Sequence record: KT919973.1
DNA: 64,000 nucleotides
Strand: one strand, 5' to 3'
In this document: piece by piece, positions 29,292 through 44,293 of the stretch
How positions within the stretch are numbered: the first letter of the stretch is position 1
How the letters are laid out: each line of letters begins with the position of its first letter
Notes under the pieces: model-generated
Told to the model about the DNA's origin: nothing
Database searches by the model: none
The model's input: only the letters and a program-made list of their open reading frames with translations
Translations under genes and position numbers: made by a program

Positions 29292-30728
29292 TTAAAAGCT
29301 GTAGCGTTCGACGCCTACAGTTTTCATCATGATCTTGACTGGCTCAAGCTCACCACCCAACAGTGAAGTCAAGATAGATGGGCTACAACCAGATACCAGT
29401 GCAGTACCCGCTTCGCCAGCTTTAACCGGAACGTTGCCAAGACGACCACGAATGTTCCAGAAGACCAGTTGTGGCATTTCATAACCAGCACGTGCGTACT
29501 TGGCTTTGATTGCATCGAAGTTCGCAGGTTCACCACGACCGTACCATCCACCACCAGTGTTTGCTTGATCGAATTCCATGTCACTCATGATAAGCAACTT
29601 GGTTGGCATATCTTCTTGTGAAAGATTTGCACGCTTCGCACGTTCTAACAGAACATCAAAGCACTTACCGATGTTCGTGCTCATGTCTTCGCCTGAACGA
29701 TTCATGTTATCAAGACGCTCTTTCAATGAAGAGCCGCGCAACTGGTGGAAGTGCGGGTCGCTTGAGAACGAAATGAACTGATCTTTGAAGATGCCTTCAT
29801 TGCGTTCAGCAACATAAATCCCAAGAGACATTGCAACTTGCTTACAAGTCACACCTGAACGGTCTGTACCTGCGTTAATTGGCGTGCTCATAGAGCCAGA
29901 CACGTCAACAACAGGGATGATGCGTTCATCAGAACCTTCCATGTAGTTTGGCAGAGCTTTCCATTGCTCGTTCGCTACAGACGCATTACCGTGACTAACG
30001 CTCTTAACGACATCGTATGGGAACAATGCGCCAGCGTTGATCTTCGCTTCACCTTTTTGAAGTGACTCGATGTAGTTTGTGTAACGTGTTGAAGCGTTAC
30101 GACCGAATGCTTGTTGATAACGAGCAGACGCTACAGAAGGCAACTTACCGAAGTCGATTGCATCCCATTTTTGCGCACACATCTTCTGCTCAACAGTGTC
30201 AGACAGAAGCGACAGAATCTTACGCCACTGCTTCGCAGTTACGCCAAGAGACTTGATTGTGCGCTTGAACACATGACCGTTTTTGCTGTTTTCACGTGGG
30301 AACCACTTCGCAGCAAGACCATTCTTGTCATTGACAATTGCGTTCGACCACATTGTAATCGCATCTTTTTCAAGACGTGTACCGAAAGCAGAAATCAAGT
30401 CATCGTAACGACCTAGTTCTGGAATTTTCGACATTACAGCACGAGCTACGTCAGGCTGTTCATTACAAAGTTTAGTGAATAGAGTACGGAAAGTACCACG
30501 TTCACCCGCACCACCGCGAACATCACGAGACCACAAAAGAATGCGTGTCGCTAGTTCTGGGTTTTCTGCAAACGCACGACCGAACAGAGTTTTAGACTGA
30601 TCGTTACCACGCATAGCAGCAATACCGAAGAACAAGTTTAGACACTCGTTACCTGAAGTGCTGTGAGTAACTGCACCGTTTGCTGTACGTGAATCGTTTG
30701 ATTGCATAGCTGACATAAATGCTGACAT
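29292..30728 (-). CDS. DUF2828 plus vWA protein (Ro60/TROVE-like RNA-binding protein)
   Basis: TANGA..H.TS, RDVRGGAGER, GRYDDL, AAKWFPRE, DVSGSMS MIDAS, SDMEFD, VFWN. Confidence 0.85.
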   Translation of the reverse strand: MSAFMSAMQSNDSRTANGAVTHSTSGNECLNLFFGIAAMRGNDQSKTLFGRAFAENPELATRILLWSRDVRGGAGERGTFRTLFTKLCNEQPDVARAVMSKIPELGRYDDLISAFGTRLEKDAITMWSNAIVNDKNGLAAKWFPRENSKNGHVFKRTIKSLGVTAKQWRKILSLLSDTVEQKMCAQKWDAIDFGKLPSVASARYQQAFGRNASTRYTNYIESLQKGEAKINAGALFPYDVVKSVSHGNASVANEQWKALPNYMEGSDERIIPVVDVSGSMSTPINAGTDRSGVTCKQVAMSLGIYVAERNEGIFKDQFISFSSDPHFHQLRGSSLKERLDNMNRSGEDMSTNIGKCFDVLLERAKRANLSQEDMPTKLLIMSDMEFDQANTGGGWYGRGEPANFDAIKAKYARAGYEMPQLVFWNIRGRLGNVPVKAGEAGTALVSGCSPSILTSLLGGELEPVKIMMKTVGVERYSF

Positions 30729-30763
30729 TGTTATTTCCTCATATTAAATTGCTGTAAAATGTC
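30724..30763 (-). promoter_or_regulatory. leader hairpin GACATT/AATGTC burying the ATG, with TACAGCAA motif in the loop
   Basis: minus strand GACATT TTACAGCAATTTAATATGAGGAAATAAC AATGTC; the ATG lies in the 3-prime arm. Confidence 0.7.
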
Positions 30764-30774
30764 GTTGATGTGAT

Positions 30775-30803
30775 GATTATACACGGATTATAACCCGTGT
30801 AAA
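30775..30803 (-). promoter_or_regulatory. T4-early-like promoter with palindromic spacer
   Basis: GTTTACA-CGGGTTATAATCCGTG-TATAAT; inverted repeat TACACGG/CCGTGTA at 30780-30801. Confidence 0.75.
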
Positions 30804-30816
30804 CAATTATTTTCAA

Positions 30817-31137
30817 TTATTTGTAATCGTGATGCCGAGTAATGTTCGTACCATTTTTGAATACTTCAACTGCCACATAACCACCAGTTTCATAGCAAGT
30901 GCGTAAATTTCGATATCCGTACTCTTCAAAGAACGCACGAATAAAACTAGAACCTTTCTTATCACAATCACTAATATGAATTGGTACTTTGATTTTAATC
31001 GGGAAAAAAGCCCCGTTTTCAATTGCATGAGTGAATTCTTTTTCACATTCAGCATTATAGTGTTCGCTAAGAACTTTACGAGCTACCTGCTCTCGTTCAT
31101 TAATTTGCTTTGAAAGTTCATCATGACTAAGCATCAT
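30817..31137 (-). CDS. hypothetical protein (paralogue of the next ORF)
   Basis: shares FPI.I.V...CD....I....G(Y/F).N with 31137-31469. Confidence 0.75.
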   Translation of the reverse strand: MMLSHDELSKQINEREQVARKVLSEHYNAECEKEFTHAIENGAFFPIKIKVPIHISDCDKKGSSFIRAFFEEYGYRNLRTCYETGGYVAVEVFKNGTNITRHHDYK

Positions 31138-31469
31138 TAAAACCCCGCTTGTTTATTTTCTCGAATTGTCAACTTCACAAACGAATATGAGTAGTCTCTC
31201 ATATCACGCGGGTCGCCAGAATAACGACCGAACTGCGCATCGAAATTGTGAAATCCCTCGCGTTTCATGACGCTTTTAATAAGAGTCATCATTTCATCAC
31301 AACACTCGTTATGCTCAAGATTCACTTGAATTGTAATCGGGAACTGAAATCCCGAAACACCACCGATCTTACGCTCAATTGATTTGCGCATTTCAACGAC
31401 GAACTGCTCTTCGCGTTTTGAACGATTCTGCTTGACTCGTTGAGTTAAAATATCATATAGATTGCTCAT
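31137..31469 (-). CDS. hypothetical protein
   Basis: 110-aa ORF, TAATG coupling. Confidence 0.75.
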   Translation of the reverse strand: MSNLYDILTQRVKQNRSKREEQFVVEMRKSIERKIGGVSGFQFPITIQVNLEHNECCDEMMTLIKSVMKREGFHNFDAQFGRYSGDPRDMRDYSYSFVKLTIRENKQAGF

Positions 31470-31834
31470 AGATATTCCTTAATATCTTTTGAAAAGTGAC
31501 GAATACATGAACTATCAAGACGTTTACGACCATCACCGTCAATATCAGGTAATGTGTACCCATCATTGAATGGCTGACCGCTTGATTTAGCGATTTCGTA
31601 TGCATCACTTCGATTGAAATATTCACCGCAGTAATTGATGAAACCTTGACCACGATCACCAAGCTCGTTACGATGCTCATATGTACAGCCAAGTTCTTTC
31701 AATAGCTTAAACACGCCTTGCATGTTTCGTCCGAAATGACAGCTATCTGCGACTACGATCTCTCGCTGCTCACCATTCGGCATAGTCACTCGAATCGCAT
31801 TAGCAGCACAAGAAATTACATTTACGTGCGACAT
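31466..31834 (-). CDS. conserved phage hypothetical protein
   Basis: H...QGFIN..GEYF.R.DAY.IAK.SGQ pattern common in phages. Confidence 0.75.
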   Translation of the reverse strand: MSHVNVISCAANAIRVTMPNGEQREIVVADSCHFGRNMQGVFKLLKELGCTYEHRNELGDRGQGFINYCGEYFNRSDAYEIAKSSGQPFNDGYTLPDIDGDGRKRLDSSCIRHFSKDIKEYL

Positions 31835-32184
31835 GTATCGTACCTCATAAAAATAGAACCAACACGTTTGTATTGATTAGAATACATTAACAGTTTTGTC
31901 ATTTTGTTGTGAGCAACAGGGTTGCTTGTTACAAGAACGACAGTTCGTGGGTAATTGCGTTGGTCGATGGCATGTGATAGAATATCATAACCCTCTCGAC
32001 CGACAGCATCACCTAAATCATTGTCCATGAAAAGTGTAATGTCAGTAAGATTCGTATACTTGACGAATTTCATGCCGTCGTCGAATGTACGAATCACACG
32101 CTTTTCATCGTCTAGAATATTTGGTTTAGTGAACTTATTAATGTCACGTAAGTCATCAATCATTACAAACATAGTATTTCTCAT
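31822..32184 (-). CDS. cyclic-phosphate-processing receiver domain protein
   Basis: MIDDLRD, LFMDNDLG, GYDIL, TSNPV receiver-like motifs. Confidence 0.8.
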   Translation of the reverse strand: MRNTMFVMIDDLRDINKFTKPNILDDEKRVIRTFDDGMKFVKYTNLTDITLFMDNDLGDAVGREGYDILSHAIDQRNYPRTVVLVTSNPVAHNKMTKLLMYSNQYKRVGSIFMRYDTCRT

Positions 32185-32222
32185 TAGTTATTAGTGCTAA
32201 ATACATCATACAGGTTTAATGA

Positions 32223-32606
32223 GTGGAAGTCAACATGAACGACGAAAAAATTATTTCTTTTGAAGAGTACCTAAATGAGGGATGGTTTGAAAGGCAATGG
32301 TCGCGATACAAAGCAGGTGCTGACTCGCGTAGTATTAAGAAACTAGCCAAGATGCACACTAAATTGTTGCATATCGAACAGAAAGCCAAGCAAAACAAAT
32401 ATCGATATGAAGCAGTGCGATATAATTACGAACACATCAAGATGAACGTGTTAGACGCGAAGAGGCTGATCAATAAGCTACGCTATAAGAAAGGTATTAG
32501 TGATGAACTAAGAATGGCAATGGACAAGTTAGATGTCGAGCTAGATAGGCTGAATGATTTTGCAGTTGAAGGTTTACATGAGCTAATGATTCAACATAAG
32601 CTATAA
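32223..32606 (+). CDS. putative late/internal head protein
   Basis: CTAAATA at 32197-32203; ISFEEYLNEG resembles a capsid-targeting sequence. Confidence 0.65.
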   Translation: MEVNMNDEKIISFEEYLNEGWFERQWSRYKAGADSRSIKKLAKMHTKLLHIEQKAKQNKYRYEAVRYNYEHIKMNVLDAKRLINKLRYKKGISDELRMAMDKLDVELDRLNDFAVEGLHELMIQHKL

Positions 32607-32610
32607 AAAT

Positions 32611-32636
32611 AAAAGCCCCAATTAAGGGGCTTTTTT
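32611..32636. terminator. bidirectional terminator
   Basis: reverse complement of the 1716/12790 terminator. Confidence 0.88.
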
Positions 32637-32637
32637 G

Positions 32638-32850
32638 TTAGTGTGAATGGCGTAACTTTTTTTCGATCATTCGATCTACAATCGTGGAGTACATAAGATG
32701 TTCTTTATAATATTTCTCATCAACTCGGTTACATTGAAAGTCTCGAAAATCTTTGCGCAGACGTGCAATAAATTTATTAAGCGTTTTGCGTACTTTGCAA
32801 ACTTCAGACAATTCCATGCTTTTTAGTGTTTCTTCAGAAAGTATTTCCAT
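32638..32850 (-). CDS. hypothetical protein
   Basis: 70-aa ORF with GAGG RBS. Confidence 0.75.
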   Translation of the reverse strand: MEILSEETLKSMELSEVCKVRKTLNKFIARLRKDFRDFQCNRVDEKYYKEHLMYSTIVDRMIEKKLRHSH

Positions 32851-32878
32851 GATTGCTCACCTCTTAGTTAATAGAATA

Positions 32879-32924
32879 CGGGAGACACAGGAATCGAACC
32901 TATTGCCTTGACCACATATCTCCC
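32879..32924 (-). ncRNA. anticodon-less mini-tRNA (acceptor stem, T arm and D-loop remnant)
   Basis: GGGAGAT/GTCTCCC 7 bp, ATAGG-TTCGATT-CCTGT T arm, linker ATGTGGTCAAGGCA. Confidence 0.6.
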
Positions 32925-32947
32925 ACTGAGAAGTTACGCCAATTGAA

Positions 32948-33181
32948 TTAATGCGCTATGCTTTGTAAACGGCGCATACGCTCACGCTGCGATAACTCAT
33001 CGAGATTGGGTTTATCAATCTCTTCGTCTTTCTCTGCGTCTTCAGTTTCTGCTTCCTTTTTAATCTTTTCAGCATTGGGACCAATGTTCTTCCAAAGAGG
33101 TGCATTGCGCCAATTTTCATTATACCCATTGCCAGAACCACGCCCTTCGCGAGCATGAGTCTTTTGATGAATGTTCTTCAT
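32948..33181 (-). CDS. hypothetical protein
   Basis: 77-aa ORF coupled to the upstream ORF. Confidence 0.7.
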   Translation of the reverse strand: MKNIHQKTHAREGRGSGNGYNENWRNAPLWKNIGPNAEKIKKEAETEDAEKDEEIDKPNLDELSQRERMRRLQSIAH

Positions 33182-33399
33182 TATTCGTTAGATTTCTTCG
33201 TTACTTGTGTTGCAAGACCTACCGCAGCAGCACTAGCGGCTACTTTAGCACCAGTTTTAGCAGCTTTACCTGCTTTCTTAGCACCTGACTTCACACGATC
33301 TTTAACAGAACGCTTCTTTTTCTTTTTGTCTTCAGGTTGCTGTTCTTGTAGTTCAGACATGAACTTGTCGAATGTTTTATCACTCATGGCTATCTCCAA
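33181..33399 (-). CDS. small basic K/A-rich protein
   Basis: TFDKFMSE capsid-targeting-like N-terminus; real start may be ATG at 33387. Confidence 0.7.
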   Translation of the reverse strand: MEIAMSDKTFDKFMSELQEQQPEDKKKKKRSVKDRVKSGAKKAGKAAKTGAKVAASAAAVGLATQVTKKSNE

Positions 33400-33419
33400 T
33401 TGTTTGAGTTCAACTGTAT

Positions 33420-33800
33420 TTAGAATAACCTAGAGTAAGCTATAGTCAACCCGATTTCTTTATCGAATACACATTGGTCATTTCCGTAAAGAACATCATC
33501 TAAACCGAATCGCTTACGTCGTCTATTACCCATGCTCATATAACGCGATAGAGCGTCTTGTGAGACGAATTCAAGTCTTTCACACATAGTATGCGGGTCA
33601 TCGGCTTGAGAACGGTCTACGACGGTTCTGTAAAGAAATAGACCATGAATCACGAAGGCTGTTAGCTTATTCGTAATCTTAACGCTGTTATTGTTCAAAT
33701 GCTCATACTGACTCATTTGAAAGAATACATCAGCATCAGGCTTTTGTGCGACACGTTTCATCTTGTAAATTGAAACTCGTTTTCTGTTTTTGTACATCAC
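33420..33800 (-). CDS. hypothetical protein
   Basis: 126-aa ORF with GGAG RBS. Confidence 0.7.
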   Translation of the reverse strand: MMYKNRKRVSIYKMKRVAQKPDADVFFQMSQYEHLNNNSVKITNKLTAFVIHGLFLYRTVVDRSQADDPHTMCERLEFVSQDALSRYMSMGNRRRKRFGLDDVLYGNDQCVFDKEIGLTIAYSRLF

Positions 33801-33868
33801 ATTGCTCCTATGTCATACGTTCACTCTATGATAATAAATAACAGAAGTAAACATAAAAGAGGTGTAAC

Positions 33869-34207
33869 ATGGCTTTCACTAAAGTTAACCTCCCTGAGAA
33901 GCGAAGTCGAAGAAGCATTTATATACCAGCAGGTCAGTATTATGCAGATCTAGACATGACTCACCCACAACAACGAGACGGGAACTATTTTTCAGTACTC
34001 GCGACATACGGTGACGTTCAAATTGCGTTTGGCGGGAGATGGTATGAAAAAACAAGACCAGAAGACCCAGAAGACCCGTTGCCGTTGTTTCCCGAAGATT
34101 TCATATTAGTTGCCAACAACGGACACTATGAGGCGCAAGGCAATCTATTCAACACTAACACTAGAATTTGGTTCAGTTCAATTTCTGGTTGCACATTAGT
34201 ATATTAA
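33869..34207 (+). CDS. hypothetical late protein
   Basis: ATAAATA at 33834-33840; GAGG RBS. Confidence 0.75.
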   Translation: MAFTKVNLPEKRSRRSIYIPAGQYYADLDMTHPQQRDGNYFSVLATYGDVQIAFGGRWYEKTRPEDPEDPLPLFPEDFILVANNGHYEAQGNLFNTNTRIWFSSISGCTLVY

Positions 34208-34216
34208 GGAAATATC

Positions 34217-35998: not shown

Positions 35999-36258
35999 GC
36001 AATACACAGACATTCGAGAAATGTTTTATCGTCTTTCCTTAAATCTCAATTGACTATAACGATGTTTCTCATCGGAAAAATACTCATGATTCGGCATGAG
36101 TCCTATTTCGTTTGACAGTACGAACACCGTCTTAATGGTCATTTCCTACCATGAGAATGCGACAGGCTCACGTCATCACTGAGAAAGCAGCTAGTGCGCC
36201 TCATTACTATTAAAGTTTGCTTTGATTTTGTAATGATTGCTGTACAATGTCTTATTGC
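35999..36258 (-). ncRNA. about 260-nt multi-hairpin RNA with GACATT-GTACAGCAAT motif
   Basis: closing stems GCAATA/TATTGC and GACATT/AATGTC; at least six internal hairpins; no ORF. Confidence 0.7.
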
Positions 36259-37929: not shown

Positions 37930-38300
37930 TAATGCCACGCGATACATCCTATATCGCTGCTAACATCTAAGTTAGCGTATCTTGCCTTTCGGCTACAGTG
38001 TCGTTTCCGACGAATTAAGTACAGACAATACCGAAGTGTTTTTTCGTCTTTTGCATAAATCGGAGTTGACTAGCTTATTGATTCTCAACAAGCAAATATC
38101 GTCTGTTTCAGCGACGCGCCTATCTGACTATTTCTAGACAGAGAGAATCTTTCCTTTCAAGCTGCGCCTAAGCAAGCTCAGGTTAAAATCAGCCCAGGTT
38201 AAGATCATCACTTCTTTTAAGTAATTTCAATTGTTTGCTGTATATTGTCTCTCTCACCATGCTCGTGATATGCCGAAGCAAAGTATCATTCGTCGCATGA
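37930..38300 (-). ncRNA. large structured RNA (230-370 nt) with ATACAGCAAA motif
   Basis: nested stems CGACGAAT/ATTCGTCG (38008-15/38288-95) and AGACAATA/TATTGTCT (38023-30/38243-50); motif immediately 3-prime of the inner stem. Confidence 0.6.
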
Positions 38301-38313
38301 TAAGAGCTTAATA

Positions 38314-38389
38314 TGGCACGCCGTATGAGATTCGAACTCATAACCCCATCCTTAGAAGGGACGTGCTCTTCCAATTGAGCTAACAGCGC
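38314..38389 (-). tRNA. tRNA-Arg(TCT)
   Basis: cloverleaf, CCA. Confidence 0.94.
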
Positions 38390-38463
38390 ATTGAAAAGAT
38401 TCGAACCATGAACTAGTGTAGACGATGGTAGTAAAGAGAGTCTACGCTCATGTGTTCGAAATT

Positions 38464-38538
38464 TGGTGGACACGCAGGGAGTCGAACCCTATCTTCCTCA
38501 TTGCAAGTGAGGCGCTTTCCCAATTAAGCTAACGGCCC
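38464..38538 (-). tRNA. tRNA-Ala(TGC), imperfect acceptor stem
   Basis: G3:U70 present; acceptor pairs fully only with a bulged U. Confidence 0.85.
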
Positions 38539-38755: not shown

Positions 38756-38779
38756 GTTATTCTCGCAGTTGTTTGAAAA

Positions 38780-38855
38780 TGGTGCCCTGACACGGATTCG
38801 AACCGCGAACCTGCTCATTACAAGTGAGCTGCACTGCCAGTTGTGCTATCAGGGC
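38780..38855 (-). tRNA. tRNA-Thr(TGT)
   Basis: cloverleaf, CCA. Confidence 0.94.
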
Positions 38856-38861
38856 GTTACT

Positions 38862-38973
38862 GAGTGTTATTACTAGCGTCGTCCAGACCAGTGATACCAA
38901 CACTGAAAGGGAATCGAACCCTAAACATTTCTTTCCGATAAGAATATTAGTAAATTGTTTGCTGAAAACACTC
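38862..38973 (-). ncRNA. about 112-nt RNA with TTCAGCAAA motif and an internal T-arm mimic
   Basis: GAGTGTT/AACACTC stem, AGGG-TTCGATT-CCCT, CAGTG-TTGGTAT-CACTG. Confidence 0.65.
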
Positions 38974-38982
38974 TTCGGTATT

Positions 38983-39056
38983 TGGCTGGGGATAACAGAT
39001 TCGAACTGATACCAACGCATTCAAAGTACGTTATGCTGCCTTTACACCAATCCCCA
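38983..39056 (-). tRNA. tRNA-Gln(TTG)
   Basis: cloverleaf, U1:A72, G73. Confidence 0.94.
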
Positions 39057-39075
39057 ATTGTTCTTAAATTATCTT

Positions 39076-39151
39076 TGGCGGAACCGACGGGTTTCGAACC
39101 CGCTACCTTCTCCGTGACAGGGAGACATGCAACCACTTACACCTCGGCTCC
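39076..39151 (-). tRNA. tRNA-Asp(GTC)
   Basis: cloverleaf, CCA. Confidence 0.95.
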
Positions 39152-39219
39152 CCAAAGACAACTTAAAGTAGTTGCTTTGTTTTTCAAGTTCACACTTAAC
39201 GGTAGTGACTCTCCGAATT

Positions 39220-39295
39220 TGGCGGACCGCCCGAGACTCGAACTCGGAACTCCTCGCTTAACAGGCGAGCACTCTAACCATTGAGTTAGCGATCC
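39220..39295 (-). tRNA. tRNA-Asn(GTT)
   Basis: cloverleaf, CCA. Confidence 0.95.
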
Positions 39296-39307
39296 TAAAT
39301 TTAAAAC

Positions 39308-39365
39308 AGTAATCCTTTTTGCTTTTTCCAAATAAAAGTGCTGTATTGTTTGCTGTAAGATTACT
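39308..39365 (-). ncRNA. minimal 58-nt motif RNA
   Basis: AGTAATC/GATTACT stem followed by TTACAGCAAAC. Confidence 0.6.
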
Positions 39366-39370
39366 TAAAC

Positions 39371-39444
39371 TGGCAGGGGCATAGAGATTCGAACTCTAAC
39401 GAACGGGTTTGGAATCCGTCATGCTGCCTTTACATCATGCCCCT
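39371..39444 (-). tRNA. tRNA-Trp(CCA)
   Basis: cloverleaf, G73, CCA. Confidence 0.93.
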
Positions 39445-39450
39445 AAAATT

Positions 39451-39524
39451 TGGTAGTCCCTAAGAGAATCGAACTCTTACCAAGCGATTATCGGTCGCAC
39501 GCTCTACCGTTGAGCTAAGGGACT
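39451..39524 (-). tRNA. tRNA-Ile(GAT)
   Basis: cloverleaf, CCA. Confidence 0.92.
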
Positions 39525-39588
39525 AAAGTGAGCACATTTCAGTGCTCGTGTTAATCGGTTAAGTGACTAAACTTCCCGGTTAACTAAT

Positions 39589-39687
39589 TGGCGGAAGACT
39601 AGGGATTCGAACCCTAACATCACCTCCCGGTGACCGACGGTTTTCAAGACCGTTGCCGCTACCCAGAATCTCTCGGCTAAGCCTTCC
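39589..39687 (-). tRNA. tRNA-Ser(TGA) with enlarged 15-nt D loop
   Basis: GCCG-AGAGATTCTGGGTAG-CGGC D arm, long V arm, CCA. Confidence 0.9.
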
Positions 39688-39693
39688 AATTAA

Positions 39694-39936
39694 TTATTTG
39701 TGTCTACCCCACATCAGCTTATCAAACTGACTAAGATATTCTTCAACTGCATCAGCATTCGCTTGACTGACAACCCAAACATTATCTTGTGATTTTGATT
39801 TGGTGTCTCTAACAGCGCCAAGTTTTTGCATCATGTTTCGATGTCTCTCTCTATCCATTGCACCACTAAAAAGTGAGCCAGAAACTCCGAAAGTAACATC
39901 TTTCGACTCGGTAATGAATTCATCAAATGTTTTCAT
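39694..39936 (-). CDS. putative internal head protein (T4 IP-like targeting sequence)
   Basis: MKTFDEFITESK vs T4 IP consensus MKTYQEFIAE; CTAAATA late promoter at 39964-39970 (-). Confidence 0.75.
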   Translation of the reverse strand: MKTFDEFITESKDVTFGVSGSLFSGAMDRERHRNMMQKLGAVRDTKSKSQDNVWVVSQANADAVEEYLSQFDKLMWGRHK

Positions 39937-39982
39937 TGTAATTTTCCTTATTGCGTAAAACAATATTTAGTCGAAATAAATT

Positions 39983-40059
39983 TGGTTGCGTGGGGCTGGA
40001 TTCGAACCAGCGTTCTCCGGCTTATGAGACCGACGAGATGACCACTTCTCTACCCCGCA
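39983..40059 (-). tRNA. tRNA-fMet-like (CAT), bulged A in the acceptor
   Basis: TGCGGGG acceptor resembles initiator tRNA; the anticodon stem lacks the three G-C pairs. Confidence 0.85.
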
Positions 40060-40069
40060 ATTATTCAAC

Positions 40070-40156
40070 AGCTTGCGTTCTTTGGTCTGTTTATCGCTGT
40101 CTGAACTGAGTTCGCCGAGCGATCAATAGATTAAGTTAAATTGCAGTATGCAAGCT
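40070..40156 (-). ncRNA. 87-nt motif RNA
   Basis: AGCTTGC/GCAAGCT stem followed by ATACTGCAAT; internal ATCGCT/AGCGAT hairpin. Confidence 0.6.
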
Positions 40157-40161
40157 AAAAC

Positions 40162-40247
40162 TGGTGGAGCGTAGAGGAATCGAACCTCTCTACCCGTTAA
40201 GGGTCAGGGATTTACAGTCCCCTGTCTCACCTTGAGACGTACGCTCC
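40162..40247 (-). tRNA. tRNA-Tyr(GTA)
   Basis: cloverleaf, long V arm, CCA. Confidence 0.93.
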
Positions 40248-40253
40248 GTAATT

Positions 40254-40328
40254 TGGTTCTCCCGACGAGATTCGAACTCGCGCACTTCACCTTGAAAGGG
40301 TGATGACCTACCGTTAGTCCACGGGAGA
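40254..40328 (-). tRNA. tRNA-Glu(TTC)
   Basis: cloverleaf, CCA. Confidence 0.93.
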
Positions 40329-40391
40329 ATTAAATTGTATATTGATTTGCAAGCTATCTAACTTGCAAAGCGATACACAATGTATCTAATT

Positions 40392-40468
40392 TGGTACGCC
40401 GCCCTGGACTCGAACCAGACACCTGAGAGTTAAAAGCTCCCTGCTCTTCCATGATGAGCTACCGACGC
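40392..40468 (-). tRNA. tRNA-Lys(TTT)
   Basis: cloverleaf, CCA. Confidence 0.94.
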
Positions 40469-40479
40469 ATTATAAAATA

Positions 40480-40554
40480 TGGTGCACCCCCTCGGAATCG
40501 AACCGAGCACTGCGGGACTTCAATCCGCCGCTTTTCCTGATAAGCTAAGGGTGC
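40480..40554 (-). tRNA. tRNA-Phe(GAA)
   Basis: cloverleaf, CCA. Confidence 0.9.
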
Positions 40555-40555
40555 T

Positions 40556-40632
40556 TGGTACGCAAGAAGAGATTCGAACTCTTAACTTCTGGTTTCTAAG
40601 ACCAGTGCCTCTGCCAATTGGGCTACTTGCGC
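40556..40632 (-). tRNA. tRNA-Leu(TAG), short variable arm
   Basis: cloverleaf, CCA. Confidence 0.93.
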
Positions 40633-40650
40633 ATTAAATTTTGTAAACTT

Positions 40651-40780
40651 CTTTTCTTCATTGTACATGATGTTTTTATCGTTGTAAACATCTTTTTTGA
40701 AAAACTTTTCATTCGATTTTGAATGATGTTTCGCTTTTCTTCATTGTACACGATGTTTATATCGTTGTAAACATCTTTTT
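40651..40780 (-). promoter_or_regulatory. two tandem-duplicated T4-early-like promoters
   Basis: 47-bp direct repeats (40651-97, 40734-80) each reading GTTTACA-17bp-TACAAT on minus with an internal GATGTTT/AAACATC inverted repeat. Confidence 0.8.
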
Positions 40781-40818
40781 GAATTTATTTTGAAGAACTT
40801 AACGTTTTCATTTTCTAT

Positions 40819-40852
40819 GTGTTAATATTAACACTCGCTCAAGACATCATAA
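40819..40852 (-). promoter_or_regulatory. promoter whose -10 lies in a 16-bp perfect palindrome
   Basis: TTTATG-17bp-TAATAT; palindrome GTGTTAATATTAACAC at 40819-40834. Confidence 0.55.
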
Positions 40853-40986
40853 ACACTAATTTATGAAAAAGTTCGTTAAATTCTATCATCTCGACAGTAC
40901 TTAACGAGATACGGTCCTAAGCGTATCAATTCGTAGAAGCAGTTTCGGGAATGTGCGAAATCGAGCTTCAATCAAACAACACTAAC

Positions 40987-41062
40987 TGGCACCCAATACA
41001 AGATTCGAACTTGTAACCTTCGCCTTCGTAGGGCGCTGCTCTTCCAATTGAGCTAATCGGGC
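40987..41062 (-). tRNA. tRNA-Arg(ACG)
   Basis: cloverleaf, CCA. Confidence 0.94.
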
Positions 41063-41070
41063 ATTAAAAC

Positions 41071-41147
41071 TGGTCCGTGACAAGCGATTCGAACGCTTAA
41101 CTTCTCCGCCCCAAACGGAGTACTCTACCAGATTGAGCTAGTCACGG
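41071..41147 (-). tRNA. tRNA-Pro(TGG)
   Basis: cloverleaf, CCA. Confidence 0.93.
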
Positions 41148-41156
41148 ATTTTAAAT

Positions 41157-41230
41157 TGGTCGGGACGAAGAGACTCGAACTCTTACCACATGCTCCCAAA
41201 GCATGAACGCTACCTTTACGCCACGTCCCG
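41157..41230 (-). tRNA. tRNA-Pro(TGG), second divergent copy
   Basis: cloverleaf, CCA. Confidence 0.93.
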
Positions 41231-41307
41231 TTTGTTCTTTAACTTTGTTTATCATACTCTGTAATCAAAGTACGTTAAACAAAATTTCTTAACTTTCTTA
41301 CGCCCAT

Positions 41308-41331
41308 AAAAAAGGACGCTATTTGCGTCCT
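41308..41331 (-). terminator. intrinsic terminator
   Basis: GGACGC AAATA GCGTCC T6 (minus). Confidence 0.85.
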
Positions 41332-41334
41332 CAA

Positions 41335-41520
41335 GTATACTTCTATGTTATACTATCGGACTACAAGAGGGTATCCCACTTCTGGTTCGCAATCGGATTC
41401 GCTAGATACACGAATTCTGAGCGCAGAAAATCGCTGCGTAATGTCTCAGATGAATGTGTAAACGAATGCGTCATTGAATGCTCTCTTGAAATAAAAATTA
41501 AAATTTGTTTTGTTTCTTTA
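41335..41520 (-). ncRNA. stand-alone rod-shaped RNA with an internal bubble
   Basis: TGT-TATAAG(TA) promoter-like site at about 41524-41534, nested stems CAAGAG/CTCTTG, CGCA/TGCG, TACAC/GTGTA, TCTGAG/CTCAGA, CGCAG/CTGCG, own terminator. Confidence 0.55.
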
Positions 41521-41601
41521 TAGTACTTATAACACTAAATCTGACGATTTGCGGTATTTCGCAGAAAATTGAAAAAAAATTATCAATTTTCTGCGATTTT
41601 A

Positions 41602-41838
41602 TTAACCTAAGTGTTTTCGCTTGTTCATTTCAGCAAGAATTTCGTCGTTGTAGTGCTTATTAAGCTCAACGAATTTCTTGTGCTGATCTGAAGTCAATTC
41701 GTTTGTATCGTTCAGATGCTTCAAAAACCCAAGAGGCTTACGAAACGACTTGCGATATTCATTCAGACGCTCATCTGTTAGATTGCGCAATTGTTTCGGA
41801 GTCAGTAACGTTTTGTTGATATTAAATGTTCCGCTCAT
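41602..41838 (-). CDS. hypothetical protein
   Basis: start moved to ATG 41838 after GAGG. Confidence 0.75.
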   Translation of the reverse strand: MSGTFNINKTLLTPKQLRNLTDERLNEYRKSFRKPLGFLKHLNDTNELTSDQHKKFVELNKHYNDEILAEMNKRKHLG

Positions 41839-41864
41839 GTTATACCTCACTAGTTTATCAAAAA

Positions 41865-41980
41865 TGGTAGTCGGGGCTGGATTCGAACCAGCGACCACGT
41901 GCTTAACAGGCAATTGAAGGAGTGCTGGAGCGATACTTGTCAGTATCATTCTTCGTGCTCTACCACTGAGCTACCCGACT
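41865..41980 (-). ncRNA. tRNA-Asn(GTT)-derived RNA with a 41-nt insertion in the anticodon stem
   Basis: removing AAGAATGATACTGACAAGTATCGCTCCAGCACTCCTTCAAT restores a perfect 75-nt tRNA-Asn with CCA. Confidence 0.8.
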
Positions 41981-41985
41981 ATGAA

Positions 41986-42507
41986 TTATTTAACTTTGAA
42001 TTTCAAATTTCGATATTCAAAGTTTCGTTTGTCTTTTTTACTGTAATACGTATCCCAATCAATAGAAACAGGACAGTTCTTACTACCCACACGAGATAAG
42101 AAAACGTCGTGAGTGTCTTTGTAAGCTTCTCTGAGAGACTTTACTTGTTTCTCATGATGAGTTATGTACTCAGCACACGCTTTGTTGTACTCAGCTTTAG
42201 AGAAGCGTTCATCGCCCGTGAAATTACCGTTTAGATACGGTCGAATAACACGAACACGTTCTTTAGACCATCCCATACTAAAACTATTTTCAATTCGACC
42301 GATGATTTCACCAGTCTTTTTACATCGTGCAAGAATAACCCAGCAACGCTCTCTTCGAAAGTCTTTTCGAGTGAATATATTGATGTACTTATCAACATAC
42401 TCTTGATAGCGTTCGTTATATATTTTACGAAGTCTGCTACGTTCTTCAATCGTCATAGCAGCACGTTCTTCTTTAGAGAACGCTTCAACGAACTTCAATG
42501 GTTTCAT
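41986..42507 (-). CDS. basic hypothetical protein
   Basis: start moved to ATG 42507 (MKPLKFVEAF) after GAGG. Confidence 0.75.
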   Translation of the reverse strand: MKPLKFVEAFSKEERAAMTIEERSRLRKIYNERYQEYVDKYINIFTRKDFRRERCWVILARCKKTGEIIGRIENSFSMGWSKERVRVIRPYLNGNFTGDERFSKAEYNKACAEYITHHEKQVKSLREAYKDTHDVFLSRVGSKNCPVSIDWDTYYSKKDKRNFEYRNLKFKVK

Positions 42508-42520
42508 TATAATTTCCTCT

Positions 42521-42760
42521 TGGCGCCGCTCGTGTGAATCGAACACACGTCAAACACAACACCTCTTCAACCCAATTAGAGTTTCGAAGTAAGAGCTAAT
42601 CAGCATTTCAGAGCAGCCGAGCGTTATTTCTACATACAAGACTTCGACATCTCACATGCACTTTCTACTCGGTCCCAGTGATTCGGTACCAACGTAGGTT
42701 GCGAGCCTACGTCTGCACTAATGTTGGGAATACACTGTGTATTGTACGCCAGTTAGCGGC
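42521..42760 (-). ncRNA. 240-nt RNA with tRNA-like acceptor/T-arm ends and CCA
   Basis: GCCGCT/AGCGGC-G-CCA, CGTGTG-TTCGATT-CACACG, several internal hairpins. Confidence 0.7.
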
Positions 42761-42764
42761 ATTT

Positions 42765-42995
42765 TTAAAGATAGCTGTCAAAAACATCATCACTGACTTC
42801 TTCAATCTTGATGTCAGCGTAACATTCGTTCGCAACTGCTCGAATTTCATCTATTGAAACTGTACCCGAGTACAAAACAACAGAGTCGTTCGGAATCACA
42901 ACATCACACATGTATCTGTCAAACATTTCAGTTCTGAAATCGTAATCGACGTAGCAGCCGTGCATTGATGTGATAACTAGCAATTTATGTGACAT
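42765..42995 (-). CDS. hypothetical early protein
   Basis: GAGG RBS; promoter immediately upstream. Confidence 0.8.
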   Translation of the reverse strand: MSHKLLVITSMHGCYVDYDFRTEMFDRYMCDVVIPNDSVVLYSGTVSIDEIRAVANECYADIKIEEVSDDVFDSYL

Positions 42996-43025
42996 AATGT
43001 TTTCCTCGTGTAGTTGATAATGTGT

Positions 43026-43054
43026 ATACTACACGTTGATGAAACGTCTGTCAA
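43026..43054 (-). promoter_or_regulatory. sigma70-type early promoter
   Basis: TTGACA-17bp-TAGTAT; inverted repeat CGTGTAGT/ACTACACG at 43007-43035. Confidence 0.8.
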
Positions 43055-43073
43055 CAACTTTTTCAATTTATTT

Positions 43074-43151
43074 TGGTGACCCCAACAGGACTCGAACCTG
43101 TAACCTACCGATTATGAGTCGGTTGCTCTAACCAAGTTGAGCTATAGGGCC
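43074..43151 (-). tRNA. tRNA-Ile2(CAT)-like
   Basis: GGCCCTA acceptor and ACCGACTCATAATCGGT arm resemble ileX-type tRNA. Confidence 0.88.
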
Positions 43152-43152
43152 A

Positions 43153-43521
43153 TTATTTCTCTAGAAATCGACCTACTTTAGCAGCGAAGATGTTTGCTTC
43201 TTCTGTAATACGAGCAGTCGATTTGATTTGATGAAATGCGTCTTGTTGATGCAGCAAATCGAGCTTATCTGCACACTTCATTAAATCTTTTATCGTTTTC
43301 ATAATCTCAATGTTATCAAACTGACTTGTATCAGGATGATGGTTGAGATTATCTAATATCGGCAGAACTTGTTGATAACAACCCATACCAATGAAGTTTA
43401 TCATAAGTCTGTATTGAATTTCAACCGAAAATGTACAATATTTTCTAAGATTGCGTTTTACAATCTCACAACGATGTAAAGTACAATCTAATTCGTTGTT
43501 TATACTATCAAACTTACTCAT
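43153..43521 (-). CDS. hypothetical protein
   Basis: start moved to ATG 43521 (MSKFDS) after GAGGG. Confidence 0.75.
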   Translation of the reverse strand: MSKFDSINNELDCTLHRCEIVKRNLRKYCTFSVEIQYRLMINFIGMGCYQQVLPILDNLNHHPDTSQFDNIEIMKTIKDLMKCADKLDLLHQQDAFHQIKSTARITEEANIFAAKVGRFLEK

Positions 43522-43537
43522 AAAACCCTCGAAATTT

Positions 43538-43656
43538 GGGAGAGTACGGGATTTGAACCACGTGACCAAAAGATTTACCTAGTTAAGGGTTGCAGAATGA
43601 ATGCTTATCAGAATTCTTTAACATTCTTTTGCTCTACCAGACTGAGCTAACTCTCC
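43538..43656 (-). ncRNA. tRNA-like RNA C with about 50-nt anticodon-loop insertion carrying ATTCTGCAA
   Basis: GGAGAGT/ACTCTCC, GCTC-AGTCTGGTA-GAGC, AAAGA/TCTTT, TTCAAAT T loop; no standard N73-CCA. Confidence 0.7.
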
Positions 43657-43661
43657 GTTAT

Positions 43662-43764
43662 CTACTTTGTTTCGCTTGTCAGGGCGCCGAAACGCTACCT
43701 AACCAAGGATTCGAACCTTTTAACCAACACCTCGCGAAAATTATTTTTCTCGTTGGCAAAGTAG
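43662..43764 (-). ncRNA. 103-nt multi-branch RNA with a T-arm mimic
   Basis: CTACTTTG/CAAAGTAG, CCAAC/GTTGG, AAGG-TTCGAAT-CCTT, GTTTCG/CGAAAC. Confidence 0.6.
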
Positions 43765-43770
43765 TAAAAA

Positions 43771-43907
43771 CATATTGAGCAGGGTGCAGGATTCGAACCT
43801 GCGTCACGATCTTGGAAATGATATGCTAAATTGATTGCAGAATACAAACTTAACAGCTTGCGTTTATGCTACGTGTGCTAGCCACTACACCAACCCTGCT
43901 CAATATG
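43771..43907 (-). ncRNA. tRNA-like RNA B with anticodon-arm insertion carrying ATTCTGCAAT
   Basis: 15-bp extended acceptor CATATTGAGCAGGGT/ACCCTGCTCAATATG, D arm, GCAGG-TTCGAAT-CCTGC. Confidence 0.75.
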
Positions 43908-44146
43908 TTCTTGAGAGTGCTTGTGGTTAATCACAAGCACCAAAAATCCTCTAGTTTATTTTGCCTTAGCTAATCAACACAACCTGAAATCGTGCGCTTT
44001 ATTTACGGGATGAATGACCCGTTCGCATATGATTAGCGCAAAAGTATGAATGCGCACCTTTTCTTCTTCAATGTCCAAGGCAAAGAGGACGATGAATACT
44101 AGTGCGAGAAGATATACAATCAAATTGTTCACCTCGCTTGATAAGT

Positions 44147-44293
44147 GAGAGTACATTGGTCGAGTGTAACGGAATCGAACCGTTCCCACGATCTCCCTAT
44201 GATATGCGTAAATTGGTTGCTGAATATAATCATGTCTGATTACAGTATGCTACGTGTGCTGCCACTACACCAACACTCGACCAATATACTCTC
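44147..44293 (-). ncRNA. tRNA-like RNA A (mature about 44157-44279) with insertion carrying ATTCAGCAAC
   Basis: CGAGTGT/ACACTCG-A-CCA, D arm nearly identical to RNA B, AACGG-TTCGATT-CCGTT, 21-bp precursor stem. Confidence 0.78.

What the first reader, a model, noticed from the sequence alone, without database searches (positions are those of the whole stretch)
29292..44279. Candidate phage Ro60-like RNP system: DUF2828/vWA protein plus a family of about ten ncRNAs sharing a stem-adjacent [A/T/G]T[A/T]C[A/T]GCAA motif
Seen: the motif lies just 3-prime of a base-paired stem, always on the minus (transcribed) strand. Instances: 30749-56 (leader of the DUF2828 gene), 36238-45 (260-nt RNA), 36410-16, 38235-42, 38959-66, 39350-57, 40141-48, 43590-98, 43835-43 and 44217-24, with a variant TCCAGCAC in the tRNA-Asn insertion. 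The RNAs share little else (58 to over 230 nt; some tRNA-shaped, some multi-hairpin), so the motif looks like a protein-binding handle. Known: Ro60/TROVE proteins (helical ring plus vWA) bind Y RNAs through a conserved stem, and bacterial YrlA RNAs mimic tRNA. DUF2828-vWA proteins are Ro-related. The motif here is not the canonical Y RNA Ro site. Inference: the phage builds a set of Ro-like RNPs, one protein with many RNA adaptors or decoys, possibly for RNA repair or defence against anticodon nucleases. I am not aware of this being described, but cannot search to confirm.
Basis: partly seen in the sequence, partly recalled or inferred. Interest (0 to 1): 0.92.

Follow-up and report, generated by a model that had tools for sequence, protein, structure and literature searches.

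The report
Phage Ro-like protein with partner RNAs
This Vibrio phage encodes a ring-shaped Ro60-like protein and ten RNAs that share one small docking module, and the same protein-plus-RNA pairing recurs in very diverse phages, which points to a widespread, undescribed relative of the Ro/Y-RNA particle.

Summary
The window is Vibrio phage phi-ST2, a KVP40-like T4 relative. The motif is real, strand-specific and enriched. It is part of a larger RNA module: a 7-bp helix capped at its far end by an A/G pair or a GNNA loop, then N-U, then single-stranded WCWGCAA.

Six copies are linear, with the helix closing the RNA. One of these is the leader of the DUF2828 gene, where the helix includes the AUG. 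Four copies are circularly permuted and replace the anticodon arm of tRNA-like RNAs. One listed instance (36410-16) is not supported.

The 478-aa protein folds like Ro60 (the top five PDB matches) with an intact MIDAS motif, but it does not match Pfam TROVE.

The module lies beside homologues of this gene, on the same strand:
- In 84 unrelated loci its density is 1.6/kb just after the stop codon, against about 0.05/kb elsewhere.
- All 81 significant covariance-model hits are on the gene strand.
- The helix covaries.
- It is present in Felix O1-like phages (Bas63), Listeria P100, a cluster L mycobacteriophage, a Campylobacter phage and bacterial contigs.

Rfam 15 has no such family, and the YrlA signature is absent.

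Binding itself remains inferred. A 2024 preprint already noted that Bas63 gp130 is Ro60-like and counters the Ppl defence, but it did not identify the RNAs.

The parts
29292..30728 (-). Gene for a 478-aa Ro60-fold protein: helical-repeat ring plus vWA domain with a MIDAS motif (Pfam DUF2828 + DUF7788; PHROG 850 'RNA-binding protein').
   Evidence: Pfam and PHROG hits. AF2 model with pLDDT 78. The top five Foldseek PDB matches are all Ro60 (9l5y, 1yvr, 2i91, 2nvo; E 7e-8 to 5e-6). D275-x-S277-x-S279, T351 and D383 are invariant in 30 homologues.
30776..30816 (-). Two overlapping sigma-70-like promoters in front of the gene: TTGAAA-18-TATAAT and TTTACA-16-TATAAT.
   Evidence: 11 of 12 matches each. 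This is a consensus match only.
30722..30765 (-). Leader copy of the module. Helix GACAUU (30763-30758) pairs with AAUGUC (30729-30724), which contains the AUG. The loop carries UU-ACAGCAA (30755-30749) and the Shine-Dalgarno sequence.
   Evidence: Sequence. CM R1 scores 14.9 bits, E 0.5, weak on its own. It is conserved in KVP40, nt-1, the L006 contig (97% protein identity) and phage 1.081.O. Leaders in L042, L048 and L050 carry strong copies (26-31 PWM bits; CM E 4e-5 and 5e-3 for L042 and L050); those in L034 and L070 carry weaker ones (18 and 15 bits). In all five the 3' strand runs into the SD.
29260..29282 (-). Terminator-like hairpin plus T-run just after the gene.
36007..36253 (-). Linear element of about 247 nt. 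Helix AGACAUU (36252-36246) pairs with AAUGUCU (36014-36008), followed by G36007; GU-ACAGCAA is at 36245-36237.
   Evidence: Strict descriptor hit. The motif is conserved in relatives.
38022..38251 (-). Linear element of about 230 nt. Helix AGACAAU (38250-38244) pairs with AUUGUCU (38029-38023), followed by G38022; AU-ACAGCAA is at 38243-38235.
   Evidence: Strict descriptor hit. The ortholog in phage 1.081.O has AGAUAAU paired with AUUAUCU+G, a compensatory C-G to U-A change.
38860..38975 (-). Linear variant of 116 nt between tRNA-Gln and tRNA-Thr. Helix GAGUGUU (38973-38967) pairs with AACACUC (38868-38862), followed by A-G; U-UCAGCAA is at 38966-38959. It contains a T-arm-like hairpin (about 38922-38907, GGUUCGAU).
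   Evidence: Sequence. RNAfold closes this helix. PWM score 24 bits. T-arm motif. The spacing and 3' flank differ from the consensus by one position.
39307..39366 (-). Linear element of 60 nt after tRNA-Trp. Helix AGUAAUC (39365-39359) pairs with GAUUACU (39314-39308), followed by G39307; UU-ACAGCAA is at 39358-39350.
   Evidence: Descriptor hit. CM R1 scores 48 bits, but this sequence was in the training alignment. Orthologs in KVP40, VS1, PVA8 and nt-1 score 50 bits.
40069..40157 (-). Linear element of 89 nt after tRNA-Tyr. Helix AGCUUGC (40156-40150) pairs with GCAAGCU (40076-40070), followed by G40069; AU-ACUGCAA is at 40149-40141.
   Evidence: Descriptor hit. CM R1 scores 22.4 bits, E 0.007, and this sequence was not in the training set.
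41868..41980 (-). tRNA-like chimera A (113 nt, ends ACCA). Permuted module at 41948-41922: UGAUACU-GACA-AGUAUCG-CU-CCAGCAC, inserted in the 5' strand of an Asn-type anticodon stem (CUGUUAA loop retained).
   Evidence: Rfam tRNA 49.8 bits with a 54-nt insertion. Fold. Permuted descriptor hit. KVP40 annotates it as tRNA-Pseudo-3.
43538..43656 (-). tRNA-like chimera B (119 nt). Module at 43626-43590: GAAUGUU-(14-nt loop containing CUGAUAAG)-AGCAUUC-AU-UCUGCAA.
   Evidence: Rfam tRNA 49 bits with a 46-nt insertion. Fold. The ortholog in phage 1.081.O has GUAUUCU-GACA-AGAAUGC-CU-ACUGCAA, a different helix sequence with the same architecture.
43778..43899 (-). tRNA-like chimera C (122 nt). Module at 43861-43835: GCAAGCU-GUUA-AGUUUGU-AU-UCUGCAA.
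   Evidence: Fold z-score -3.4 with acceptor, D and T arms. Permuted descriptor hit. Annotated tRNA-Cys in GenBank.
44160..44279 (-). tRNA-like chimera D (120 nt, ends ACCA). Module at 44243-44217: GUAAUCA-GACA-UGAUUAU-AU-UCAGCAA.
   Evidence: Fold z-score -2.8. Permuted descriptor hit. 98-100% conserved in KVP40, nt-1, VS1 and PVA8.

Best explanation
The phage encodes a Ro60-fold ring protein (DUF2828/DUF7788 type) and a set of RNAs that each carry one common docking module for it. The module is a 7-bp helix. Its far end is capped by an unpaired A (5') opposite a G (3'), or closed by a G-N-N-A loop. Its near end continues through N-U into single-stranded WCWGCAA. Each RNA is therefore 'handle plus variable body'. 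The bodies are short A-rich loops, long multi-hairpin bodies, a T-arm, or a whole tRNA-like scaffold in which the permuted handle replaces the anticodon arm. The protein most likely binds the handle, giving one ring protein many RNA adaptors, as Y RNAs do for Ro60. A copy of the handle in the gene's own leader, with the SD in the loop and the AUG in the helix, most likely lets the protein repress its own translation.

Shown here: the module, its covariation, its permuted form, the fold of the protein, and the cross-phage linkage of module and gene.

Inferred: physical binding, autoregulation and the biological role. The likely role is control or protection of RNA or tRNA metabolism during infection. 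A homologue in coliphage Bas63 counters the Ppl defence system.
For: Protein:
- The top five Foldseek matches are Ro60 proteins over the full length.
- The MIDAS residues are invariant.

RNA module:
- RNAalifold predicts the same 7-bp helix on an unsupervised MAFFT alignment of 36 elements, and 6 of 7 pairs show compensatory changes.
- The seventh pair was not used to pick the sequences, yet it is paired in 35 of 35 with four pair types.
- The covariation score is 0.865, against 0.187 shuffled and 0.18 or less when the partners are slid.
- The partner strand is followed by G far more often than in controls.

Linkage to the gene:
- PWM hits are 174 on the gene strand against 18 on the other, in 1.42 Mb around 80 homologues.
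- Strict structural descriptor hits are 174 against 35, with about 39 in shuffles; 72 of 84 loci have one.
- Density is 1.62/kb in the 500 nt after the stop codon against 0.04-0.16/kb elsewhere.
- All 81 CM hits at E<=0.01 are on the gene strand.
- No other window protein is shared by those loci.
- Marine loci with no tRNA within 10 kb still carry the element right after the gene.

Same arrangement elsewhere:
- Salmonella phage BPS15Q2 and E. coli phage Bas63: 4 elements each.
- Listeria P100: 3. Mycobacteriophage Clautastrophe: 3. Campylobacter PC14: 1.
- 8 of 14 bacterial or MAG contigs.
- Permuted handles inside tRNA-like RNAs also occur in Aeromonas phage Aeh1 and contig L051.

Other support:
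- Reverse test: 3 of 8 structured matches from a blind pattern scan have the gene on the same strand, against 0 of 72 unstructured matches (P 7e-4).
- Leader mimicry occurs in six lineages.
Against: - No binding, expression or processing data exist for any of these RNAs.
- In this window the free RNAs lie 5.3-13.5 kb from the gene, not adjacent to it. Only the leader copy is adjacent.
- The leader copy and the 38860-38975 element deviate from the consensus (3' flank A-G, one mismatch or shifted spacing), and the leader scores only 14.9 bits.
- 23 of 84 loci lack a strict hit near the gene, although several of these have visible variants such as GCAGCAA with imperfect helices.
- The CM and PWM were trained on sequences from the same set of loci, so part of the hit counts is circular. 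The strand bias, the position bias and the hits in Felix O1-like, P100, mycobacteriophage and bacterial loci are independent of that.
- The AF2 model is of moderate confidence (pLDDT 78; TM about 0.5 to Ro60), and Pfam TROVE is not matched.
Confidence: 0.72

Rival explanations
1. The module is a cis-acting processing or stability signal read by host or other phage RNases (RNase E/III/P-type maturation of polycistronic tRNA and mRNA transcripts). On this reading the Ro-like gene sits beside it only because both belong to the same early or tRNA transcription units.
For: In the window most elements sit directly 3' of tRNAs, 13-23 nt after the CCA. Many homologous loci have tRNA or tmRNA genes on the same strand. 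Deinococcus Ro is known to assist exonucleolytic rRNA maturation (background quoted in PMC4201824).
Against: Marine loci with no tRNA within 10 kb still carry the element within about 20-130 nt of the stop codon. The only protein common to all loci is the DUF2828 protein. A processing signal does not explain the permuted copy inside tRNA bodies or the leader copy that buries the SD and AUG.
Confidence: 0.12
2. The elements are autonomous functional RNAs, such as a small self-cleaving ribozyme or a ligand-sensing element, whose activity does not need the Ro-like protein.
For: There is a conserved single-stranded heptamer next to a covarying helix. Small ribozymes are known next to phage tRNAs (own knowledge, not tested here).
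Against: The minimal copies are a 7-8-bp stem with a loop of about 16-20 nt in which only ACAGCAA is conserved, which is too little for known ribozyme or riboswitch folds. The bodies between the helix strands range from 18 to 323 nt with no shared sequence. Rfam 15 gives no ribozyme or riboswitch hit.
Confidence: 0.05
3. The motif acts at the DNA level, as a phage promoter element, a homing-endonuclease or recombination site, or the scar of a small mobile element that inserts into tRNA genes.
For: KVP40-type phages have no defined middle promoters (own knowledge of Miller et al. 2003, not re-read here). Homing endonuclease genes occur in the tRNA clusters of relatives. The insertions in tRNA-like genes look like insertions.
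Against: Compensatory base changes preserve an RNA helix. The motif has no fixed spacing to -10-like boxes: it lies downstream of, or overlaps, sigma-70 promoters at variable distance. Strand specificity follows transcription. The elements differ in sequence between copies, unlike recent mobile-element copies.
Confidence: 0.03
4. Chance recurrence of a short AT-rich word in non-coding DNA.
For: Most raw matches to an 18-nt pattern in IMG/VR (72 of 80) are unstructured and look like chance.
Against: Poisson P is 1e-6 in the window. 81 of 81 CM hits are on the gene strand. There is a roughly 10- to 40-fold positional enrichment and covariation.
Confidence: 0.005

Closest known systems
Bacterial and phage Ro60 (Rsr, TROVE family) with Y RNA / YrlA (Rfam RF02553); Chen et al. 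2014, PMC4201824
   Same: A ring-plus-vWA protein is encoded on the same strand as, and usually within a few hundred nt of, one to several small RNAs. The RNAs combine a protein-binding stem with a variable body that often mimics tRNA. The mycobacteriophage and Felix O1-like elements here even carry the YrlA-type permuted T-arm / stem-loop / D-arm core.
   Different: The protein is a different sequence family (DUF2828 + DUF7788; no Pfam TROVE hit even at E 10). The RNAs lack the GNCGAAN0-1G signature and score 21 bits or less in the window, and 39 bits in the mycobacteriophage, against a gathering score of 69. The handle is a capped 7-bp helix plus ACAGCAA. It also occurs circularly permuted inside otherwise normal-order tRNA-like RNAs, and in the gene's own leader.
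Thermus phage phiLo phiRo60 with Yrl1/Yrl2 (Hu et al. 2025, PMC12135203; PDB 9l5y)
   Same: It is the best structural match of the model (E 7e-8). It is a phage Ro60 with two adjacent Y-like RNAs upstream of the gene.
   Different: phiRo60 is a canonical Ro60 homologue whose RNAs were picked by the CGAA motif. Sequence identity to the window protein is 16%.
Bas63 (Escherichia phage JohannRWettstein) gp130, counter of the Ppl defence system (preprint 10.1101/2024.10.10.617714)
   Same: bas63_0130 is a direct homologue (45.6% identity over the full length). The authors noted Ro60-like structure and its position upstream of the tRNA cluster, and suggested that some 'tRNAs' might be Y RNAs.
   Different: No RNA partner was identified there. 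Here four handle-bearing elements are found between the annotated tRNAs of Bas63; two of them underlie reverse-strand 'hypothetical protein' calls. These, rather than the tRNAs, are the candidates.
Autoregulatory mRNA operators that mimic the protein's main RNA ligand (ribosomal-protein operons, T4 RegA/gp32, MS2 coat protein hairpin)
   Same: A copy of the ligand motif overlaps the SD and AUG of the protein's own mRNA.
   Different: The resemblance is recalled from general knowledge. No repression has been measured here.

Membership tests
Ro60 / TROVE proteins | Match to the Pfam TROVE domain (PF05731) | tested here: not met
   hmmscan at E<=10 lists only DUF7788, DUF2828 and noise. PDB sequence and profile searches find only designed armadillo repeats.
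Ro60 / TROVE proteins | Fold: alpha-helical repeat ring followed by a vWA domain | tested here: met
   AF2 model with pLDDT 78. Foldseek ranks 1-5 are Ro60 from Thermus phage, Xenopus and Deinococcus, with 508-561 aligned columns and TM 0.45-0.56. The next hits are vWA-only.
Ro60 / TROVE proteins | MIDAS motif (DxSxS...T...D) in the vWA domain | tested here: met
   D275, S277, S279, T351 and D383 are invariant in 30 homologues of 52-81% identity.
Ro60 / TROVE proteins | Binds Y-type RNA through a conserved stem | not testable with these tools
   Only genomic linkage is shown.
YrlA / Y RNA (Rfam RF02553) | Covariance-model score at or above the gathering score (69 bits) | tested here: not met
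   The best window hits are 18.9-21.4 bits and span ordinary tRNAs. The mycobacteriophage element scores 39.3 bits through its tRNA-like core only.
YrlA / Y RNA (Rfam RF02553) | GNCGAAN0-1G motif near the 5' end (proposed Ro contact; PMC4201824) | tested here: not met
   Absent from all ten window elements.
YrlA / Y RNA (Rfam RF02553) | Encoded within about 4 kb of the Ro gene, on the same strand | tested here: inconclusive
   Same strand: yes. In the window only the leader copy is adjacent; the others are 5.3-13.5 kb upstream. Across 84 other loci, 61 have a strict hit within 2 kb upstream or 0.5 kb downstream.
YrlA / Y RNA (Rfam RF02553) | tRNA-like domain (T arm, stem-loop, D arm) | tested here: inconclusive
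   Present in YrlA order in the mycobacteriophage and Felix O1-like elements. In the window it appears as four normal-order tRNA-like scaffolds and one T-arm. It is absent from the short hairpin-type elements.
tRNA (for the four chimeras) | Acceptor, D and T arms | tested here: met
   Rfam tRNA 49.8 and 49.0 bits for A and B. The folds of C and D show the same arms, but Rfam does not call them.
tRNA (for the four chimeras) | 5-bp anticodon stem with a 7-nt loop at the normal place | tested here: not met
   Insertions of 46-54 nt replace or split it. ARAGORN calls none of the four. KVP40 annotates its copies as pseudo-tRNAs.

The most novel reading that the evidence does not exclude
The handle is a portable address tag. 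By grafting it onto different RNA bodies, including complete tRNA look-alikes that keep an Asn-type anticodon loop, phages use one Ro-like ring to capture or blind several host factors at once: tRNA-recognising nucleases, exoribonucleases, or sensors such as Ppl. That would make this a general, programmable RNA-adaptor counter-defence platform, present in hundreds of phage genera.
Probability: 0.2. Interest if true: 0.9.

Novelty: new variant of a known kind. Interest (0 to 1): 0.8.

Why it matters
Ro60/Y-RNA particles are known, but their function in bacteria and phages is poorly understood, and partner RNAs are known only for canonical TROVE proteins.

This analysis assigns a defined RNA partner class to a much larger and separate protein family. 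At least 711 sequenced phages carry the protein, along with thousands of metagenomic proteins. They include model and therapy-relevant phages: Felix O1-like/Bas63, Listeria P100, KVP40-like vibriophages and cluster L mycobacteriophages.

It gives a precise, mutable binding module, explains the 'pseudo-tRNAs' of KVP40-type phages, and predicts autoregulation. It also supplies the missing RNA component for a protein already shown genetically to counter a bacterial defence system.

Many of these RNAs are currently unannotated or mis-annotated as tRNAs or as small reverse-strand ORFs.

Tried and rejected
- Promoter reading. I compared the motif with the reverse complement of the T4 MotA box and looked for a fixed distance to -10-like hexamers. 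The distances vary from 2 to 13 nt, and the motif usually lies downstream of sigma-70 boxes, so I rejected it.
- Known RNA families. Rfam 15 at gathering and at permissive E-values, on the window and on 11 related loci, gave only tRNA, tmRNA, a group I intron, a sub-threshold ROOL hit and a sub-threshold YrlA hit.
- First pairing test. It used the wrong register for the 5' arm and showed no difference from shuffled arms. Shifting by one base and asking what follows the partner resolved it.
- CM R1. Built from compact elements, it recovers long elements poorly. E36, E38a and E38b appear only as weak partial hits, so a structural descriptor was used for those.
- Blind pattern scan of IMG/VR. The 18-nt pattern returned mostly chance matches (72 of 80), so it was usable only as an internal control.
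- Literature. 'DUF2828' gives five unrelated papers. The supplements of Chen et al. 2014 and the 2020 Annual Review are not held.
- Orthologs in phage 1.081.O. The expected partners for the E36 and E38b helices were not found within 340 nt, so those two long-range helices rest on the window sequence alone.

Full report
**What the window is.** The region is 100% identical to Vibrio phage phi-ST2 (KT919973.1; window position = record position minus 62000). This is a KVP40-like Schizotequatrovirus. Positions 36.2-44.3 kb hold a minus-strand tRNA cluster with 26 ARAGORN tRNAs, and Rfam adds three more tRNA matches. Two of those are 113 and 119 nt long because 46-54 nt are inserted where the anticodon arm should be. 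Two further 120-122-nt sequences fold with acceptor, D and T arms around a similar insertion. KVP40 annotates its copies as tRNA-Pseudo-3/4/5.

**Checking the observation.** The nine-base pattern occurs at the stated coordinates on the minus strand.
- It is enriched: 24 matches against 10.7 +/- 3.3 in shuffles for the whole window.
- The 8-mer T[AT]C[AT]GCAA occurs ten times on the minus strand of the 8.4-kb cluster, against 1.3 expected (P 1e-6).
- The sites are kept at orthologous positions in KVP40, nt-1, VS1, PVA8 and the more distant phage 1.081.O.
- The listed instance at 36410-16 has only the CAGCAA core, with neither the conserved U nor a helix. I do not count it.

**What the motif belongs to.** The key step came from outside the window. 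Eighty IMG/VR loci that encode homologues of the 478-aa protein (46-54% identity, plus one KVP40-like locus, L006, at 97%) showed a longer shared sequence, about TAAAGAnTnGnT-ACAGCAA. It lies upstream of the gene, including its leader, or directly after its stop codon. The 6-7 nt before N-U-ACAGCAA pair with a segment further downstream that is followed by G. The two strands change together, for example AGGAUA/UAUCCU, AGAUUA/UAAUCU, AGAGUG/CACUCU and AGACUA/UAGUCU.

On an unsupervised MAFFT alignment of 36 compact elements, RNAalifold predicts exactly this 7-bp helix.
- Six of seven pairs have compensatory changes.
- The innermost pair played no part in choosing the sequences. It is paired in 35 of 35 cases with four pair types.
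- The covariation score is 0.865, against 0.187 for shuffles and 0.18 or less for slid partners.

From 126 distinct elements the consensus is (A/U)AA-[A G R W U N N]-N-U-W-C-A-G-C-A-A ... [N N A W Y C U]-G. Between the helix strands lie 18-323 nt (median 55) with no common sequence beyond an A-rich start.

**The window's copies.** Six are linear, meaning the helix closes the RNA:
- the leader of the gene (30765-30722);
- 36253-36007;
- 38251-38022;
- 38975-38860, a variant that contains a T-arm-like hairpin;
- 39366-39307;
- 40157-40069.

The long-range helix of the 230-nt element is confirmed by a compensatory change in phage 1.081.O, from AGACAAU/AUUGUCU to AGAUAAU/AUUAUCU.

In the four long tRNA-like RNAs the same helix is formed with an upstream partner. 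Its far end is closed by GACA or GUUA, or by a longer loop containing CUGAUAAG. This means the G and A that flank the linear form are joined into the loop, which makes these copies a circular permutation of the module, grafted in place of the anticodon arm. The 1.081.O orthologs keep this architecture with different helix sequences. Such tRNA-handle chimeras also occur in Aeromonas phage Aeh1 and in an unrelated 183-kb contig, in both cases downstream of the homologous gene.

**The protein.**
- Pfam gives DUF2828 + DUF7788, and PHROGs gives 'RNA-binding protein'.
- TROVE is not matched, and sequence searches of the PDB find only armadillo-type repeats.
- An AlphaFold2 model (pLDDT 78) matches Ro60 structures as its top five PDB hits over the full length: Thermus phage phiLo, Xenopus and Deinococcus. 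After these come isolated vWA domains.
- The MIDAS residues are invariant.
- In mycobacteriophages the family is already labelled 'Ro-like RNA binding protein'.

**Linkage of RNA and gene.**
- A strict structural descriptor (core, 7-bp helix, partner followed by G) gives 174 hits on the gene strand, 35 on the other strand and about 39 in shuffled loci. 72 of 84 loci have a gene-strand hit.
- Density is 1.62 per kb in the first 500 nt after the stop codon, 0.16 per kb in the 2 kb upstream, and 0.04-0.12 per kb elsewhere.
- All 81 covariance-model hits with E<=0.01 lie on the gene strand.
- No other protein of the window recurs in these loci.
- Loci with no tRNA within 10 kb still carry the element next to the gene, so the link is to the gene and not to tRNA clusters.

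The arrangement holds in sequenced phages of quite different kinds: Salmonella phage BPS15Q2 and E. coli phage Bas63 (four elements each between the tRNAs), Listeria P100 (three, upstream), mycobacteriophage Clautastrophe (three, downstream) and Campylobacter phage PC14 (one). It also holds in 8 of 14 bacterial or MAG contigs.

In a reverse test, 3 of 8 structured matches from a blind pattern scan had the gene on the same strand in the held stretch, against 0 of 72 unstructured matches.

**How it most likely works.** The helix plus single-stranded heptamer is best read as the docking site of the Ro-like protein, and the rest of each RNA as a variable effector part. That matches how Y RNAs work with Ro60, and several elements carry the YrlA-type T-arm / stem-loop / D-arm core.

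The leader copy places the Shine-Dalgarno sequence in the loop and the AUG in the helix. Leaders of five distant homologues run the helix's 3' strand straight into the SD. This predicts translational autorepression.

The gene looks like its own unit: sigma-70-like promoters, leader, CDS, terminator.

All of this is inference from anatomy and linkage. No binding or expression data exist.

The biological role is open. The only functional datum is that deleting the Bas63 homologue gp130 sensitises that phage to the Ppl defence system. RNA-repair genes lie nearby in some phages, for example RtcB in P100.

**Comparison with what is known.** This works like a Ro60/Y-RNA system but fails the membership tests for both families. 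There is no TROVE match, no YrlA score and no GNCGAA motif. Chen et al. 2014 searched only genomes annotated with TROVE proteins. The Bas63 preprint noted the fold and guessed at Y RNAs among the tRNAs without finding them. Rfam 15 has no matching family. I therefore rate it a new variant of a known kind.

**Limits.**
- The PWM and the CM were trained on the same collection of loci.
- Two window elements deviate from the consensus.
- Two long-range helices lack comparative support.
- The model of the protein is only moderately confident.

Noticed in passing
L087 (Listeria phage P100, NC_007610.1) 968-1519: A ROOL-like RNA (Rfam RF03087, 86 bits, below the gathering score of 99; E 3e-16) lies between tRNA genes, about 650 nt upstream of the three handle elements and the Ro-like gene, on the same strand. 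An RtcB 'tRNA splicing ligase' gene lies 1.3 kb downstream of the gene.
   Followed up: no
L054, L056, L072, L074 (IMG/VR contigs), about 4.4-7.4 kb downstream of the DUF2828 gene: Phage-encoded tmRNA genes on the same strand as the Ro-like gene in four loci. In L054, L056 and L074 a tRNA-Met follows, and further handle-type hits lie around them.
   Followed up: partly
window 41922-41948 with 41905-41917; L067 (Aeromonas phage Aeh1) 14050-14180: Chimera A and the Aeh1 chimera both keep an Asn-type anticodon loop (CUGUUAA on a short stem) just 3' of the inserted handle, although a normal tRNA-Asn is also present in the window. Whether the insertion is ever removed is unknown.
   Followed up: partly
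window 43690-43745 (minus strand): Between chimeras C and B lie a T-arm-like hairpin (AAGGUUCGAAUCCUU) and a hairpin GUUUCG-GCGCCCUGACAAG-CGAAAC. The second hairpin's loop has the CUGACAAG signature of the permuted handle but is not followed by ACAGCAA. It may be a decayed element.
   Followed up: no
window 28718-29248 (minus strand): The gene directly downstream of the Ro-like gene encodes a DUF458 / RNase H-like protein (PF04308, E 4e-17). It keeps this position in KVP40 and phage 1.081.O. Among the 83 distant loci it was found only in L051.
   Followed up: partly
window 40660-40810 (minus strand): Two near-identical copies of a strong sigma-70-like promoter block (AAAAGATGTTTACAACGATA.AAACATC.TGTACAATGAAGAAAAG) sit in tandem upstream of tRNA-Leu(tag).
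   Followed up: no
window 38467-38538 (minus strand): A tRNA-like gene found by Rfam (44.9 bits) but not by ARAGORN. It is annotated as a pseudo-tRNA in phi-ST2 and KVP40, and its anticodon loop reads CUUGCAA (UGC, Ala-type).
   Followed up: no
L223 (Bas63, MZ501086.1) 4876-5089; window 38189-38473 and 38955-39284: Small ORFs overlap handle elements. In Bas63 the 'hypothetical protein' calls bas63_0137/0138 lie on the opposite strand over two elements and are probably spurious. In the window, mechanical ORFs lie over elements on either strand.
   Followed up: partly
L002 (KVP40) 17231-17343 (minus strand): KVP40 tRNA-Pseudo-5 is a fifth chimera type (GAAGUCU-GAUA-AGAUUUC-AU-UCUGCAU). It gave no full-length match in this window.
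   Followed up: partly
L033 19404-19595: A group I intron (Rfam 58.6 bits) lies within a tRNA cluster about 8 kb downstream of a DUF2828 gene in a marine phage contig.
   Followed up: no
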